64,000 bases of DNA from Antechinus flavipes. Lineage: Eukaryota. The notes below the pieces were generated by a model, which saw nothing but the letters and a program-made list of their open reading frames with translations, did not search any database and was not told the origin of the DNA. Every line of letters begins with the position of its first letter. Positions within the stretch are counted from its first letter, which is position 1. Both the position numbers and the translations under genes were made by a program. Shown here in pieces: positions 10,150 through 57,330 of this stretch. Location: the NCBI RefSeq assembly GCF_016432865.1, contig NC_067403.1, positions 255,998,001 through 256,062,000 on the forward strand. Reading direction: 5' to 3'.

Positions 10150-10960
10150 TTGGAGAGGAGGAAGGAAGAAGAGGGAATGGAGAGATGGAGAAGAGGGAAA
10201 GGAGAGTTGGAGAGATGGAGAAGAGGGAAAGGAGAGTTGGAGAGATGGAGAAGAGGGAAAGGAGAGAAGGAGAGAGAGAGAAGAGGGAAAGGAGAGATAG
10301 AGAGATGGAGAGTTGAAGAGGGAAAGGAGAGATAGAGAGATGGAGAGTTGAAGAGGGAAAGGAGAGATAGAGAGATGGAGAGTTGAAGAGGGAAAGGAGA
10401 GATGGAGAGATGGAGAGATGGAGAGTTGAAGAGGGAAAGGAGAGGAGAGAGAGAGAAGAGGGAAAGGAGAGGAGAGAGAGAAGATGGAGAAGAGGGAAAG
10501 GAGAGGAGAGAGAGAAGATGGAGAAGAGGGAAAGGAGAGGAGAGAGAGAAGATGGAGAAGAGGGAAAGGAGAGAAGAGAGAAGATGGAGAAGAGGGAAAG
10601 GAGAGAAGGAGAGATAGAGAAGAGGAAAGGAGAGAAGGAGAGAGAGAAGATGGAGAAGAGGGAAAGGAGAGAAGGAGAGATGGAGAAGAGGGAAAGGAGA
10701 GAAGGAGAGATGGAGAAGAGGGAAAGGAGAGAAGGAGAGTTGGAGAAGAGGGAAAGGAGAGTTGGAGAAGAGGGAAAGGAGAGATGGAGAAGAGGGAAAG
10801 AGAGATGGAGAGTTGAAGAGGGAATGGAGAGTTGGAGAAGAGGGAAAGGAGAGAAAGAGAGATGGAGAGTTGAAGAGGGAAAGGAGAGAAGGAGAGATAG
10901 AGAAGAGGGAAAGGAGAGATGGAGAGGTGGAAATGGAGGGGAGAGGAGGGAAAAGTCAGA
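10150..10960 (+). repeat. cytosine-free GA-rich tandem array (core GAAGAGGGAAAGGAGA, more than 20 copies, 20-35 nt period)
   Basis: Read directly: no C between about 10150 and 10956; recurring units such as GGAGAAGAGGGAAAGGAGAGATGGAGA and GTTGAAGAGGGAAAGGAGAGA. Confidence 0.95.
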
Positions 10961-11203
10961 TGGAACGAGGAGAGGAGGAAGGATCTTGGAGAGAAGATAA
11001 GTCAGGAGAGCAGGGGAAGCTCAGATGGACAGAAGAGAAAGGGAGAGGAAGGATCTTGGAGAAAAGAGGGAAGGTCAGTTGGAGAGAAGGGGAGATGAGG
11101 AGTCAGCAAAGGGAGGGCCAGAGCCTGTTCCTGGAGGCTGAAGGGGAAGGAGGCTCCTCCTCCCTGGCAGTTCTGGGGGACAATGGGGGGCAGCCCCGTC
11201 CGC

Positions 11204-11293
11204 GGGTGTTTCTTTTCCTGAGGCCGCCTGGCAGCCTCAGGTTTTGCTTTTCACCCTTAAAATGTGTGAGAGAGAAGGTGCCAAAAAGCAAAA
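11204..11293 (+). other. 3'-terminal RNA triple helix (ENE plus A-rich tract) of NEAT1_2
   Basis: Outer stem GGGTG(11204-08)/CACCC(11252-56); U-rich 1 TTTCTTTT(11209-16); inner stem CCTGAGGC(11217-24)/GCCTCAGG(11234-41); U-rich 2 TTTTGCTTTT(11242-51), perfectly complementary to AAAAGCAAAA(11284-93). Confidence 0.95.
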
Positions 11294-11346
11294 GGCACTG
11301 GTGGTGGCACGCCCAGTGGGCCGGGGTTCGAGTCCCCGCGGTGCCT
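11294..11346 (+). ncRNA. menRNA-like tRNA-mimic small RNA (RNase P/RNase Z substrate)
   Basis: Acceptor GGCACTG(11294-300)/CGGTGCC(11339-45); D-arm GTG-GTGG-CAC(11301-10); short arm GCCC-AGT-GGGC(11311-21); T-arm CGGGG-TTCGAGT-CCCCG(11322-38); begins exactly after the A-tract. Confidence 0.95.
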
Positions 11347-11649
11347 CTGCTGCTACTGGCTCCCTTCTCTCCCGTGAGGACTCCAGCTGGGGAGGGTCTG
11401 GGTTCCAGGATTGGGGAGGGGGCCAAAGTTGCTTCTCTTGGTTGTTCTGGGCCCTGAACGGGGCACCTGGCAGTGGGCAGGCCCGAGTCACAGAATCTGA
11501 GCCGGGCTGAGCTCAGACCATCAGGTTCCCTATATACCAGCCATAAGGACAAAAAGGAAAAGTCCCCACCTTCAAGGGGCTTGTATTTTGATGGGGGCAC
11601 TTACATGTGGGCATACAGTAGGTGACAAAAACAGCCCTTGGAGTTTTGC

Positions 11650-11785
11650 AAGTTCTATACGTGACCTTGTGAGTTTATATCCCCATTCTTACAGATGAGT
11701 AAACCGAGGCCCAGAGCTTAAGCCACTTGCTCAGGATCACGCAGCTTCATTAGGAAGTGGCTTTTGAGCCTGGAACATCATCCGA
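11650..11785 (-). mobile_element. MIR/CORE-SINE fragment
   Basis: ccccattcttacagatgagtaaaccgaggcccagag...cttgctcaggatcacgcagc is the CORE consensus in reverse. Similar fragments occur near 17500, 20390, 21280 and 23640. Confidence 0.75.
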
Positions 11786-12416
11786 GGAAGAGCAGGGAGG
11801 CCGGACCGAGCTGGAGAGAGGAACTTCTGAATGTCGGGCGGACTTTGTAGTTGGAAGCCCCAGAATAGCTGGAGTGTCTCCAACCGGAGTGGGGAGTCCC
11901 TGGCAGCCGCAGGGGGGAGAAGGGCAGGGGAGAGGCCAGAGCCGGGTGGCGTCAGTCTGCAGGACCCGATGAATGGGCCCGTGGGAGGAGGGTGGGAGAG
12001 CAGGAGAGTGACTCGGGGCGCTCAGCAGCTCCAGGAGGGCAGAGAAGGGGGAATGACAAGACTTGGCAACGTGTTTCTGCAGGAGAGGTGAGGGTGGGAG
12101 GCGGACCCAGAGTTGGGCAAAACGGGGAAAATGGGCAAGAGAGGATGGTTGGGGGTGAGAGGGAGAGACAGGGTGTCTACTGCCATTCAGTCAGGGTCCA
12201 AGAGTTAGCCACTGTGAGACCGAGGCCCGGAGAGATGTTGGGGCTGTTACACAGACCCAGGAGTTGTTGGCACAGAAGTGATTGGACCCGTGGGAGTTTG
12301 ACGTCACCAATTGATCAGAAGTATTGAGGGAGCCGTCTTGGGGGACTCGGGGATTGTTGAACTGGATGAAGATCTGGTGGAGGAGGCAGAGCAGGAGCCG
12401 TCTCCTAGCTACGGAA

Positions 12417-17385: not shown

Positions 17386-18141
17386 ATTCAAGTTCTGTGG
17401 ATATTTATCTCGATATAATTTTTAAAAACCCTGCGGCTGAGCCAGGAGCAGCCCTCAAACCCAGGACTTTGCCAATTCTGGGAGGCAGGAAATACAAAAG
17501 TTCCCATTTTATAAATGAAGAAACTGAGTCTCAGGAGGTCAGCAGGTCCTCTGGGGATGTGTCAAGAATCACACAGCTAGCCGAGGCCTCCAAGCTATTC
17601 TTTCCCATAAGCTACCCTGCCTCTGAGACTGAATGAGCATTTATGTTTGACCGTATGTATGCATTTGAGGGCGAATGAGCACATTTACCTTCCAAGGCAC
17701 TGCGTTTCAGGTTGGGCCTAAAAACAAAGAAAAAGGGCATTCTGGCTCCCCAGGGTATTCACCCCCAAGGGCTGACAGAGAGGGGGATGGGGAGATGCTT
17801 GATGGGCAAAAGCAGCGTGGGTGTGTCTGCTTCCATGTGGGACAGCGAGCTTCCCTTTGACTCGACCACGAGGCCATCTCGAACTGGAGACAATCCAATG
17901 GGCCGCGCTGGGCATCCCAGAGAACTGGCTCAGGAATGCTGGGAAGCCAGGGTGAGCCCGCTGGATAGGCAGGAAGAAGAAAAAAGGCCGCCAGACCGAT
18001 GGGAACATCCAGACAGCAGGCACCCGCAGAGAGCTGGGCCCCAGGAACCACGGTTCCTTGAGGGCCAACTCCTGGGTCCCATTACATTGTTGTACCGAGC
18101 TCGGGCCACGAGGGGGTGCAATGGTTCGATCTTTATAGCCC

Positions 18142-18240
18142 CAGTGCCTGGCATTCAGTAGGTGATTAATAAAGGAATGAATTCACTATGCCGTCAAATG
18201 GACAAGCATTTATTAAGCACTTACTGGGTTCCAGGCACTG
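18142..18240. repeat. tail-to-tail inverted pair of LINE-2 3' ends
   Basis: Arm 1 CAGTGCCTGGCATTCAGTAGGTGATTAATAAA (18142-73) and arm 2 TTTATTAAGCACTTACTGGGTTCCAGGCACTG (18209-40); both match the L2 3' terminus, in opposite orientations. Confidence 0.8.
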
Positions 18241-18690
18241 TGCTTGTAAATGTTGAAGATATAAATAATGTACAAGCCAAAAAAAAAAAAAAAAAAGTGC
18301 CTGTCCTCAGGGAGCTTATATTCTAAGGGAGAAGACAAAACCGAAAAGGGACATGAAAGGGGGGGAAGAGGGGGAGGAAGGGAGGGTCCCGGATGTGCTG
18401 GGGAAGTAGAGGCTGAAGAGCGACTGGTCCATCTAATGGAAGGTCTGGGAGGGCCTCAGCTTCTCTCTGTGGCAAGAGGGCACCAGGACAGCAGGAGCCA
18501 CACGGGCTTTCCCCTTCTGGCGACTTCCAAACAGTCCCAAGGCGCTGAATTGCTGGGTTTGCACGGTTTGCTTTCTCCTCACTGGCCCAGGGTCCGAGCT
18601 AGGGAGTGTCAGAGGTCGGATTTGAACTCACCAACACAGGGAGTCCAGGGAGTCCTGGGCGTCCCGGGCGTCCCGGCCCAGCGGTACCAC

Positions 18691-18709
18691 GACGCCCCCT
18701 AGCGGCCCA
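18691..18709 (-). promoter_or_regulatory. CTCF-like site (reverse orientation)
   Basis: Minus strand reads TGGGCCGCTAGGGGGCGTC; the core CCGCTAGGGGGC fits the consensus CC(A/G)C(C/T)AG(A/G)(G/T)GGC. Confidence 0.6.
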
Positions 18710-19079
18710 GACACACTACACACAACACTGGCTGCAGAGTTCCTGCACATAGTAGGCACTTTGTTGTCCTGGAAGGCATAAAGTCCTTGTTATTCCAGAA
18801 ACAAAGACGCCCCCAAGGGCGTTTCCCTCTGGTTTCTGAATCCCCTGACCCTTGCTGGGCACGCACCCAGGAGAAGCGCAGTGCCCTCGTCCCCTTGAAT
18901 TGGGGCTCCCTGAGGGATTCTGGCAGTTGGCACCTGGGCGCCCCTCGGGCATTTAATGGTCCACTGGGCTGGGCCGCAGCTCCCGCCCCCAGGAAGCTCC
19001 TGCTCTAACGCTGCCAGGTAAGGACGGGGACCAGAAGCCGAGGGCCATGAGCTGGCAGGAAAGGCGAGGACCGGAGCCC

Positions 19080-19345
19080 GGCAGGGACAGCCGGGAAGGG
19101 GGGGGGGGGGGGGGGGGGGCCACGGGCAGGGACAGCCGGGGGGCCGCCACGGGCAGGGACAGCCGGGGGGCGCCACGGGCAGGGACGGGGGGGGCGCCAC
19201 GGGCAGGGACGGGGGGGGCGCCACGGGCAGGGACGGGGGGGGCGCCACGGGCAGGGACGGGGGGGGCGCCACGGGCAGGGACGGGGGGGGCGCCACGGGC
19301 AGGGACAGCCGGGGGGCCGCGGGCAGGGACAGCCAGCGGGGCCGC
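19080..19345 (+). repeat. 24-bp G-rich VNTR (GGGGGGGGCGCCACGGGCAGGGAC)
   Basis: Five exact 24-mers at 19187-19306, nine GGGCAGGGAC cores in total, plus a 22-nt G run at 19098-19119. Confidence 0.95.
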
Positions 19346-19519
19346 GGAGCCCCCAGACCTTCCCTAGCTATCTGCTGCCCCCCAGGGAGGGGATGACAGA
19401 AGCAGGGAACATCTCATCCGAGGCCGTAACCGTGGCCGGGCTTTGGCCAAAGCCAGGCCCAAGGAGGCTGTCCCCTCTGATCCTGGCTGCTCGTGGGCGG
19501 GGCCGGGCCGACGCCGGTC

Positions 19520-19538
19520 TGGCCACCAGGGGGCCCTC
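19520..19538 (+). promoter_or_regulatory. CTCF-like site (forward orientation)
   Basis: TGGCCACCAGGGGGCCCTC versus consensus TGGCCACCAGGGGGCGCTA (17/19). Confidence 0.7.
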
Positions 19539-21589
19539 GCGGACAGCGAGTCCGTTCCAGAGCGGGGCGGGCCCCCCTCCCACCTGCCTGCACTGTGGCG
19601 GGCACTGCAGAGATGCGTCATGTCTGCGGGCAGAGCGCTGCCCCCCCCCCCCTCCGCAGGAGAGGGGGAGGGGTGGGGAGGCGGCCCAAATCTGGCCTCC
19701 AGGGCTCCCAGGTGGCAGGGCCTGGGCTTGGGGAGGGGGCCGAGCCTGGCAAGCCCCTTTTAATGGAAAAGGCAGCTGGGGCCTCGTGGGGGAGGGGCCG
19801 GGCCCAGGCTTCCCAAGTGTAGCGGGCGGGGCTTCCCGGAGCTCGCAGAACGGAGGCCCTGGAAGGGAGGGTCTCTTTTACAGAGGAGTAAACTGAGGCA
19901 CGGGCTAGGACCAACGCCCCCGTCAGTGATCCCAGCAGGACGTGACCAGTACAGACTTCCTGGCTGCCCACGTGGCACTGCCCATCCGGCGGCCCCAAGG
20001 CTTTCAGGCCACCCGCGGTGGATGACCAGCAATGTTTTGCTGGCTATATTTGGAACTCCCAGAAGCCCTCGGGGTATTTACAGGCTTGGCGGTGGCAATA
20101 ATAAGCTAAGCTGAGTCACCGGAGAGTGACAGAGAGCTAGTCCCCAAGGCCCGGGGGCTGTGACGCACTTCCTCTCCCTCCCGGGCCGGGCTCCCACTTT
20201 AATCTCTAAATTCCTGGTCCCCGGTTCTGCTCGGTGGGCACAAATCCTGTCGGCTGGTCCCACAGTCGTCTGAGCCCACGACCTCCTGGGCCCCGCCCTC
20301 TCTAAAAGCCAGTTATGCCCCTGGCTTTAAGTCTTGCCCTCCTCAGAGCTGAAAGGCTCAGGAAGCATCCCAGAAGGCTCCACCCCCATTTTACAGATAA
20401 GAACACTGAGGCCTAAGGTCACTTAGCTTCAGAGGGTAAGGAATCCAATCACCCAGACTTGAACCCTCAGGGTGGCTCTGATAAAGCAGAAAGAGCCCAG
20501 AGTCTGCAACCTGGCTCTGACGAGTGTTATCTGTGTGACCTTGTTCAAGTTATTGTCCCTCTGTGGACCTCAGTTTCCCCATCTATAAAATGTGGTGGTG
20601 GAATGGCACTAGCCCCTCCCCTTTCCTCCCCACCCTCACCAAACTAGTCAAGGAACCATCATGGCCTGCCTCCCCTTAGCTTCCTGCTCCCAGCTCCCCC
20701 CACCCGTGCCCCTGCTCCCTGGAGTCTTCCCTTCCCCAGTCTGCTCAGCCTTTCCTCCCATCTTTTGCAGACTCCTGGCTGAGGTGCAGGGCGGCCCCTG
20801 TTCCCCTGGGAGGCCGTTCCTCCCAGGCCAGAAGGCCTTGAATGTGCCAAACCCTCTGAAGCCGAAGCCCCGAGCCCAGGCCCCACCACCTGGCTCCCAC
20901 CTCCCACTGCTCCCCCGGCCTTCCTGGGGAGCGAGGGAGCCGTTCCTTTTCTGCTCTGGGACCTGCTTTTTTCCAGCTCTGGTCCGGGGTTCCTTGGTGC
21001 CCGCTTGTCTAGAGCACATCCCTCAAGTGGGTACCTTCTCTTCCTTCCTACCCAGTACCCCTCCTTCCAGCAGCCTTCCCTGTTCCCCTCCCCCCGGCTG
21101 AAAGTCTTCTTCCAGAAAAGTCAAAGGGTCAGAGGATCAAATGAGATGTTTGTAAAGCCCTTGGCTCAGGCCTGGCACCTTGGCTTCAATTGTTTTTCAC
21201 TCTGTCTGACTCTGTGTGACCCAGTTTGGAGTTTTCCTGACAGAGAGCCTGGTGTGCACTGCCATTTCCTTCTCTGGCTCATTTTACAGATGAGGAAACC
21301 GAGGCAAGCAAGGTGAAGTGACTTGCCCGGGGTCACACCGCTAGTAAGTGTCTGAGGCTGGATTTGACCCCAGGATGATAAGCCTTCCTGAATCCAGTCC
21401 TGGTGCTCTATCCCCTGCACCACCCAGCTGCCCCGTTTCAGCTTTGGGGAACATTTTCTGGCATTCTATCCATCGTGCCACCTAGATGTCCCTATGTGAC
21501 TGACGCATAGTAGGCACTTAATAAATGCTTGTTCTCTTTCCTTTGTGAGCTGGGATTGGAAGTGACCTCAGTCACCCGGCTTACGTGGC

Positions 21590-21956: not shown

Positions 21957-22576
21957 NNNNNNNNNNNNNNNNNNNNNNNNNNNNNNNNNNNNNNNNNNNN
22001 NNNNNNNNNNNNNNNNNNNNNNNNNNNNNNNNNNNNNNNNNNNNNNNNNNNNNNNNNNNNNNNNNNNNNNNNNNNNNNNNNNNNNNNNNNNNNNNNNNNN
22101 NNNNNNNNNNNNNNNNNNNNNNNNNNNNNNNNNNNNNNNNNNNNNNNNNNNNNNNNNNNNNNNNNNNNNNNNNNNNNNNNNNNNNNNNNNNNNNNNNNNN
22201 NNNNNNNNNNNNNNNNNNNNNNNNNNNNNNNNNNNNNNNNNNNNNNNNNNNNNNNNNNNNNNNNNNNNNNNNNNNNNNNNNNNNNNNNNNNNNNNNNNNN
22301 NNNNNNNNNNNNNNNNNNNNNNNNNNNNNNNNNNNNNNNNNNNNNNNNNNNNNNNNNNNNNNNNNNNNNNNNNNNNNNNNNNNNNNNNNNNNNNNNNNNN
22401 NNNNNNNNNNNNNNNNNNNNNNNNNNNNNNNNNNNNNNNNNNNNNNNNNNNNNNNNNNNNNNNNNNNNNNNNNNNNNNNNNNNNNNNNNNNNNNNNNNNN
22501 NNNNNNNNNNNNNNNNNNNNNNNNNNNNNNNNNNNNNNNNNNNNNNNNNNNNNNNNNNNNNNNNNNNNNNNNNNNN
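21957..22576. other. assembly gap (620 N)
   Basis: N run, followed by GA/GAAA low-complexity sequence at 22577-22720. Confidence 1.
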
Positions 22577-57239: not shown

Positions 57240-57330
57240 CTTGCCTAACAAAGGGGGCGGAGGGTTATGTGTTCTTGGCGGTGAGGCTGTCCGTGGTGTA
57301 TAAATACAGCTCCTCCCAACGCCCTCTCAG
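57240..57330 (+). promoter_or_regulatory. MALAT1 core promoter (GC box plus TATA)
   Basis: GGGGGCGGAG (57253-62) and TATAAATA (57299-306); resembles the human MALAT1 major-TSS context as I recall it (caaaggcggcggaagg...tataaatac). Confidence 0.75.

What the first reader, a model, noticed from the sequence alone, without database searches (positions are those of the whole stretch)
11294..11346. menRNA variant with a near-perfect acceptor stem and a shrunken anticodon arm
Seen: the acceptor GGCACUG/CGGUGCC has six Watson-Crick pairs and one G-U, and the anticodon-equivalent arm is only GCCC-AGU-GGGC (4 bp, 3-nt loop). Established: CCACCA marking for decay needs a 5' GG start plus an unstable acceptor stem, and this explains why mouse menRNA is unstable. 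Inference: this RNA keeps the GG start but has a stable stem, so it should receive a single CCA and may accumulate like mascRNA. It would also be a very small natural RNase P/Z substrate.
Basis: partly seen in the sequence, partly recalled or inferred. Interest (0 to 1): 0.7.

Follow-up and report, generated by a model that had tools for sequence, protein, structure and literature searches.

The report
Marsupial NEAT1 tRNA-like end piece (menRNA)

Summary
Window 11294-11346 (+) is a 53-nt cloverleaf with acceptor GGCACUG/CGGUGCC (six Watson-Crick pairs, one U-G) and an 11-nt anticodon-like arm (4 bp, 3-nt loop). It scores 68.5 bits on Rfam mascRNA-menRNA. It directly follows a NEAT1-type triple-helix element.

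It is not a special variant. The triple helix plus tRNA-like stretch is letter-identical to the Antechinus flavipes row of a published table of about 506 mammalian NEAT1 genes. The 11-nt arm occurs in at least 15 of 16 marsupial rows. In 49 species read by eye, 38 have fully paired acceptor stems and 15 have at least six Watson-Crick pairs. Thirteen combine a GG start, G-C at pairs 1 and 2, and no mismatch. The mouse C-A mismatch looks mainly a muroid-rodent trait.

The single-CCA prediction is plausible but untested. Shifting into the register needed for a second CCA costs about +5.6 kcal/mol here, against +1.9 for a mouse-type stem and +0.8 for a human-type stem.

The scan noted this same stretch once more (s1-183201), on this genome, not on other DNA. 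The window is not human. Verdict: already known, low interest.

The parts
11209..11293 (+). NEAT1 (MEN-beta) triple-helix element. U-rich motif 1 is at 11209-11216, the hairpin at 11217-11241, U-rich motif 2 at 11242-11251, then a linker, then the A-rich tract AAAAAGCAAAA at 11283-11293. The predicted mature 3' end of the long NEAT1 isoform is at 11293.
   Evidence: Read. It is letter-identical to the NEAT1_Triplex entry of Antechinus flavipes in the PMC12941219 supplementary table. The hairpin forms in the precursor fold.
11294..11346 (+). menRNA, 53 nt before CCA addition. 5' acceptor strand 11294-11300, D arm 11301-11310, anticodon-like arm 11311-11321, T arm 11322-11338, 3' acceptor strand 11339-11345, discriminator U 11346.
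   Evidence: Rfam RF01684 at 68.5 bits. Cloverleaf minimum-free-energy fold. Identical to the published A. flavipes NEAT1 tRNA-like entry.
11347..11354 (+). 3' trailer CUGCUGCU, removed by RNase Z. UGCU at 11348-11351 can pair with leader AGCA at 11287-11290, which extends the acceptor helix in the precursor.
   Evidence: Precursor fold. The trailer is nearly invariant in marsupial rows. The same kind of leader-trailer pairing was shown for MALAT1 and predicted for MEN-beta (PMC8457004).

Best explanation
This is the tRNA-like 3' module (menRNA) of the long isoform of NEAT1 in a dasyurid marsupial, Antechinus flavipes or a very close relative.

Inferred mechanism, by homology with the mouse and human system:
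- The nascent transcript folds into the cloverleaf, with its acceptor helix extended by leader-trailer pairing.
- RNase P cuts between 11293 and 11294. The freed A-rich 3' end of NEAT1 is then tucked into the upstream U-rich triple helix.
- RNase Z cuts after U11346, and the CCA-adding enzyme makes a 56-nt RNA.

The main job of the module is to make the NEAT1 3' end. The processing enzymes read the acceptor/T-arm stack and the D/T elbow. Those parts are identical to human menRNA here, so the anticodon-like arm is free to vary, and it was shortened to 11 nt in marsupials.

Pairs 1:72 and 2:71 are G-C and the stem has no mismatch. The RNA should therefore resist the refolding that leads to CCACCA, and is more likely than mouse or human menRNA to carry a single CCA. 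That property is shared by roughly a quarter of the mammals sampled, so it is not peculiar to this species.
For: - Identity: Rfam hit; cloverleaf fold; NEAT1-type triplex directly upstream.
- The 147-nt triplex plus tRNA-like stretch is identical to the A. flavipes row. Of two diagnostic substrings, one hits 2 rows and the other 3, and only A. flavipes has both.
- The published NEAT1-end to MALAT1-start spacing is 46,034 nt. An earlier scan note puts the MALAT1 start at window 57329, about 46,036 nt after 11293.
- The D arm and T arm equal those of human menRNA in the table. They hold the tertiary contacts seen in the crystal structure: the G8-C17 pair, the D-loop GG and the T loop (PMC11693755).
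- RNase P and the CCA-adding enzyme measure the T-arm/acceptor stack from the elbow (PMC4919913).
- NEAT1 hairpin II is reported as highly variable (PMC12941219).
- Leader-trailer helix (PMC8457004).
- Energy proxy for the shifted minus the native register: +5.6 kcal/mol here, +3.3 with G2.U71, +1.9 with a mouse-type stem, +0.8 with a human-type stem.
Against: - No expression, cleavage-site or 3'-tail data exist for any marsupial menRNA.
- The energy proxy ignores the enzyme. The real check is mechanical, done on the enzyme.
- U73 is a weakly stacking discriminator that the CCA-adding enzyme disfavours (PMC4477674), and U6.G remains in the stem.
- The primary papers on the CCACCA rule (Wilusz 2011, Kuhn 2015) could not be read. 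The rule is taken from reviews.
- The MALAT1 position was not verified independently.
Confidence: 0.85

Rival explanations
1. One reading: an exceptional menRNA that receives a single CCA and accumulates as a stable cytoplasmic small RNA with a role of its own, like mascRNA.
For: GG start with a stable stem. The register shift has the highest cost of all stems tested (+5.6 kcal/mol). mascRNA with a single CCA is stable (PMC9777231).
Against: It is not exceptional. The loop of the short arm drifts among marsupials (AGU, AUC, ACU) and the acceptor varies within Antechinus, which suggests little constraint on the small RNA itself. Steady-state level also depends on NEAT1 long-isoform output and on other decay routes. 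There are no data.
Confidence: 0.3
2. It is a processing by-product that is degraded quickly whatever the stem stability, through CCACCA or another route. The stem differences between species are neutral drift.
For: Acceptor stems range from perfect to doubly mismatched across mammals with no clear pattern. menRNA is very scarce in human cells (PMC9777231). Selection is reported as strongest on hairpin III, the T arm (PMC12941219).
Against: By my recollection of Wilusz 2011, which I could not re-read, stabilising the stem of mouse menRNA switches it to CCA and lets it accumulate. By that rule this RNA should not be tagged.
Confidence: 0.4
3. It is not menRNA but the MALAT1 mascRNA, a tRNA gene or pseudogene, or a chance fold.
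For: The fold energy is no better than that of shuffled sequence.
Against: ARAGORN finds no tRNA. The upstream triplex has the NEAT1-type hairpin and linker and a 5-A tract. The D loop has 4 nt, not the 5 of mascRNA. The A. flavipes mascRNA is a different sequence in the same table, and it would lie beyond the end of the window.
Confidence: 0.02

Closest known systems
Antechinus flavipes NEAT1 tRNA-like structure (supplementary table of Arkhipova and Drukker, Mol Biol Evol 2025, PMC12941219)
   Same: Letter-identical triplex and tRNA-like sequence, and the same spacing to MALAT1.
   Different: Nothing in the sequence. The paper does not discuss acceptor stability, CCA fate or the short marsupial arm. 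The words 'acceptor' and 'anticodon' do not occur in its main text.
Opossum (Monodelphis domestica) NEAT1 tRNA-like RNA
   Same: Identical acceptor GGCACUG/CGGUGCC, identical T arm, the same 11-nt arm with a GCCC/GGGC stem, and the same trailer.
   Different: The arm loop is AUC instead of AGU. The D stem is GCA/UGC instead of GUG/CAC, which is two compensatory pair changes.
Human menRNA (crystal structure, PMC11693755)
   Same: Identical D arm and T arm, GG start, 7-bp acceptor, same position after the A-rich tract.
   Different: The human anticodon-like arm is 17 nt, against 11 nt here. The human acceptor has three G.U pairs, including 1:72 and 2:71.
Mouse menRNA (the CCACCA paradigm)
   Same: Same 5' acceptor strand GGCACUG, and G-C at 1:72 and 2:71.
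   Different: Mouse has a C3.A70 mismatch, shared with other muroids (at least 43 table rows carry that 3' strand). Its arm is 15 nt.
mascRNA (MALAT1)
   Same: Same Rfam family and the same processing logic. Both have a U discriminator.
   Different: mascRNA starts GA, has a 5-nt D loop and a 15-nt arm, and follows a longer A tract.

Membership tests
mascRNA-menRNA (Rfam RF01684) | Covariance-model score at or above the gathering score. | tested here: met
   68.5 bits against 42.5, over the full model length.
mascRNA-menRNA (Rfam RF01684) | Cloverleaf without linker residues: 7-bp acceptor, 3-bp D stem with GG in the loop, 5-bp T stem with a 7-nt loop. | tested here: met
   The minimum-free-energy structure is this cloverleaf. 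The D and T arms are identical to human menRNA.
mascRNA-menRNA (Rfam RF01684) | Lies directly 3' of the A-rich tract of a triple-helix element. | tested here: met
   AAAAAGCAAAA ends at 11293, and the U-rich motifs lie at 11209-11251.
mascRNA-menRNA (Rfam RF01684) | Cut by RNase P and RNase Z, then CCA-added. | not testable with these tools
   No expression or end-mapping data are available.
menRNA (NEAT1) rather than mascRNA (MALAT1) | NEAT1-type triplex hairpin and linker, short A tract, 4-nt D loop. | tested here: met
   Identical to the NEAT1 column and unlike the MALAT1 column of the same species.
menRNA (NEAT1) rather than mascRNA (MALAT1) | Lies upstream of MALAT1 on the same strand. 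| tested here: inconclusive
   The published spacing of 46,034 nt fits an earlier unchecked note that puts MALAT1 at 57329. I did not verify MALAT1 myself.
CCACCA-tagged decay substrates | 5' end starts with GG. | tested here: met
   G11294 and G11295.
CCACCA-tagged decay substrates | Destabilised acceptor stem. | tested here: not met
   Six Watson-Crick pairs, one wobble, no mismatch. The register shift costs +5.6 kcal/mol, against +1.9 for a mouse-type stem and +0.8 for a human-type stem.
CCACCA-tagged decay substrates | CCACCA tail observed on the RNA. | not testable with these tools
   Needs 3' RACE or tRNA sequencing.

The most novel reading that the evidence does not exclude
menRNA instability is a lineage trait, not a mammalian rule. 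In this dasyurid, in opossums and in about a quarter of mammals (GG start, G-C at pairs 1 and 2, no mismatch), menRNA escapes CCACCA tagging and persists as a stable small RNA of about 56-62 nt. Its fate in mouse and human would then be the exception.
Probability: 0.3. Interest if true: 0.45.

Novelty: already known. Interest (0 to 1): 0.2.

Why it matters
The element itself is catalogued and ordinary. The useful by-product is a comparative point. The published table shows that menRNA acceptor stems range from perfect (gundi, jerboa; hippopotamus has even lost the GG start) to doubly mismatched (echidna). The CCA-versus-CCACCA fate studied in mouse and human may therefore differ between species. 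Opossum, a laboratory animal, has the same acceptor stem as this window and would allow a direct test.

Tried and rejected
- ARAGORN found no tRNA.
- The fold z-score is not significant, so the energy alone is no evidence.
- A permissive Rfam scan of 10800-11800 gave only chance-level extras: PreQ1-III, an enterovirus cloverleaf on the minus strand, and sX11, all far below their gathering scores.
- My first energy evaluation forced a non-standard C.A pair and gave unreliable values. I replaced it with constrained ensemble energies.
- These papers were not held: Wilusz 2011, Kuhn 2015, Sunwoo 2009, Cornelis 2016, Wilusz 2016. The CCACCA rule is therefore cited from reviews.
- A literature search for menRNA in marsupials found nothing relevant.
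I read stems by eye for 49 species instead.
- The stem variants are point changes on the window's own RNA that copy only the 7+7 acceptor letters of other species.
- I ran no scans of the viral, metagenome or microbial genome collections, because they do not hold mammalian genomes.
- The window is not human, and I handled no human contig.

Full report
WHAT IS THERE

Window 11294-11346 (+) reads as a 53-nt cloverleaf.
- The acceptor GGCACUG/CGGUGCC has six Watson-Crick pairs and one U6.G wobble.
- The D arm is GUG-GUGG-CAC.
- The anticodon-like arm is GCCC-AGU-GGGC (4 bp, 3-nt loop, 11 nt).
- The T arm is CGGGG-UUCGAGU-CCCCG.
- The discriminator is U at 11346.

The minimum-free-energy fold is exactly this cloverleaf and holds 82% of the ensemble. 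Its energy is not better than that of shuffled sequence (z -0.83). The evidence against chance is the Rfam hit. RF01684 mascRNA-menRNA matches at 68.5 bits against a gathering score of 42.5, over the full model length, with a 4-nt deletion in the anticodon-like arm. ARAGORN calls no tRNA.

IDENTITY AND CONTEXT

Directly upstream, 11209-11293 holds two U-rich motifs around a hairpin, a linker, and the tract AAAAAGCAAAA ending at 11293. This is the NEAT1/MEN-beta triple-helix layout.

The supplementary table of Arkhipova and Drukker (Mol Biol Evol 2025, PMC12941219) lists the triplex and tRNA-like sequences of about 506 mammalian NEAT1 genes. The window's 147-nt triplex plus tRNA-like stretch is letter-identical to the Antechinus flavipes row. 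Of two diagnostic substrings, one occurs in 2 rows and the other in 3, and only A. flavipes has both. A. stuartii differs by one base.

The published distance from the NEAT1 end to the MALAT1 start in that assembly is 46,034 nt. An earlier, unchecked scan note puts the MALAT1 start at window 57329, about 46,036 nt after 11293. The published NEAT1 length (32,485 nt) and MALAT1 length (8,209 nt) also explain two absences: neither the NEAT1 5' end nor the mascRNA falls inside the window. The window is therefore a dasyurid marsupial, A. flavipes or a near relative, and not human. The element is already catalogued.

HOW UNUSUAL ARE THE TWO FEATURES?

I read the NEAT1 tRNA-like entries of 49 species by eye.

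Arm length:
- All 11 marsupials read have an 11-nt arm with a GCCC/GGGC stem and loops AGU, AUC or ACU.
- By substring counts, at least 15 of the 16 marsupial rows have it.
- Echidna has 15 nt, mouse 15, human 17, and most placentals 16-17. Rattus rattus has 12 and squirrels 14.
- The short arm is therefore a marsupial-wide trait, and the shortest seen in this sample, but not a property of this species alone.

Acceptor stem:
- The identical stem occurs in Monodelphis and Gracilinanus.
- A. stuartii and the quoll have two wobbles.
- Most of the diprotodonts read and Dromiciops have G2.U71.
- Koala has a G.G mismatch, and echidna has two mismatches.
- Among all 49 species, 11 have a mismatch. 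Nine of them are rodents, mostly muroids with C3.A70. At least 43 rows in the whole table carry that 3' strand.
- 38 of 49 are fully paired, and 15 of 49 have at least six Watson-Crick pairs.
- Gundi and jerboa have seven Watson-Crick pairs with a GG start. Hippopotamus has seven and starts GA.
- 13 of 49 combine a GG start, G-C at 1:72 and 2:71, and no mismatch. Examples are elephant, otter, fur seal, hyrax, capybara and guinea pig.

The arm is standard in marsupials, and the stem type is common in mammals.

HOW IT MOST LIKELY WORKS

The processing pathway is inferred by homology. RNase P cuts 5' of G11294 and frees the A-rich 3' end for the triple helix. RNase Z then cuts after the discriminator, and CCA is added (PMC11693755; PMC8457004).

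In the precursor fold, leader AGCA (11287-11290) pairs with trailer UGCU (11348-11351), and A11293 pairs with U11346. This matches the extended acceptor helix shown to aid MALAT1 processing and predicted for MEN-beta. The trailer UCUGCUGCU is nearly invariant in marsupials.

The D and T arms are identical to those of human menRNA. They carry the contacts seen in its crystal structure: the G8-C17 pair, the D-loop GG and the T loop. RNase P and the CCA-adding enzyme read the elbow and the T-arm/acceptor stack, not the anticodon limb (PMC4919913). That fits the reported high variability of NEAT1 hairpin II and explains why a 6-nt loss there is tolerated.

CCA OR CCACCA?

Reviews state that CCACCA addition needs a GG start and an unstable acceptor stem. 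After the first CCA, the RNA refolds on the enzyme so that C74 and C75 pair with G2 and G1 and three residues loop out (PMC10275265; PMC4307339).

As a proxy I compared constrained ensemble energies of the native and the shifted register, on the window RNA plus CCA and on acceptor point variants of it. The costs of the shift are:
- +5.6 kcal/mol for this RNA
- +3.3 kcal/mol with G2.U71
- +1.9 kcal/mol with a mouse-type stem
- +0.8 kcal/mol with a human-type stem

It is only an equilibrium estimate made off the enzyme. U73 is also a poor discriminator for the CCA-adding enzyme (PMC4477674). Whether the RNA accumulates is unknown.

SIZE CLAIM

At 53 nt (56 nt with CCA) it is 5-6 nt shorter than human menRNA and mascRNA. 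Functional mitochondrial tRNAs of 45 nt exist (PMC12013499). It is therefore small for a nuclear substrate, but not a record.

VERDICT

The element is known and its exact sequence is published. The two features are clade-typical or common. What remains is a modest, testable idea: the fate of menRNA may differ among mammals. Opossum is a practical test system for it.

LIMITS

- The primary CCACCA papers and the opossum NEAT1 paper were not available.
- The species census is a by-eye sample of 49 of about 506 rows.
- I ran no alignment-based covariation statistics.
- By eye, the D stem shows two compensatory pair changes between this window (GUG/CAC) and opossum (GCA/UGC).

Noticed in passing
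window 10171-10931: A purine-rich (GA) tandem array with period about 30, 23.6 copies and 83% matches. It ends roughly 280 nt before the NEAT1 triple helix. An earlier scan entry (s1-183247) also noted it.
   Followed up: partly
window 11287-11290 with 11348-11351: Leader AGCA and trailer UGCU can pair and extend the acceptor helix in the precursor. The trailer is nearly invariant across marsupial rows of the published table.
   Followed up: partly
window 21957-22576: A run of 620 N. I left it as it is.
   Followed up: no
window 18001-20000: A GC-rich block (GC 0.65, CpG observed/expected 0.51) in the stretch between NEAT1 and MALAT1. It could be a CpG island of an unannotated promoter.
   Followed up: no
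   Followed up: no
published table PMC12941219 (no locus held): Hippopotamus menRNA starts GA and has a seven-pair Watson-Crick acceptor like that of mascRNA. Gundi and Gobi jerboa have perfect seven-pair stems with a GG start. Rattus rattus has a 12-nt anticodon-like arm.
   Followed up: partly
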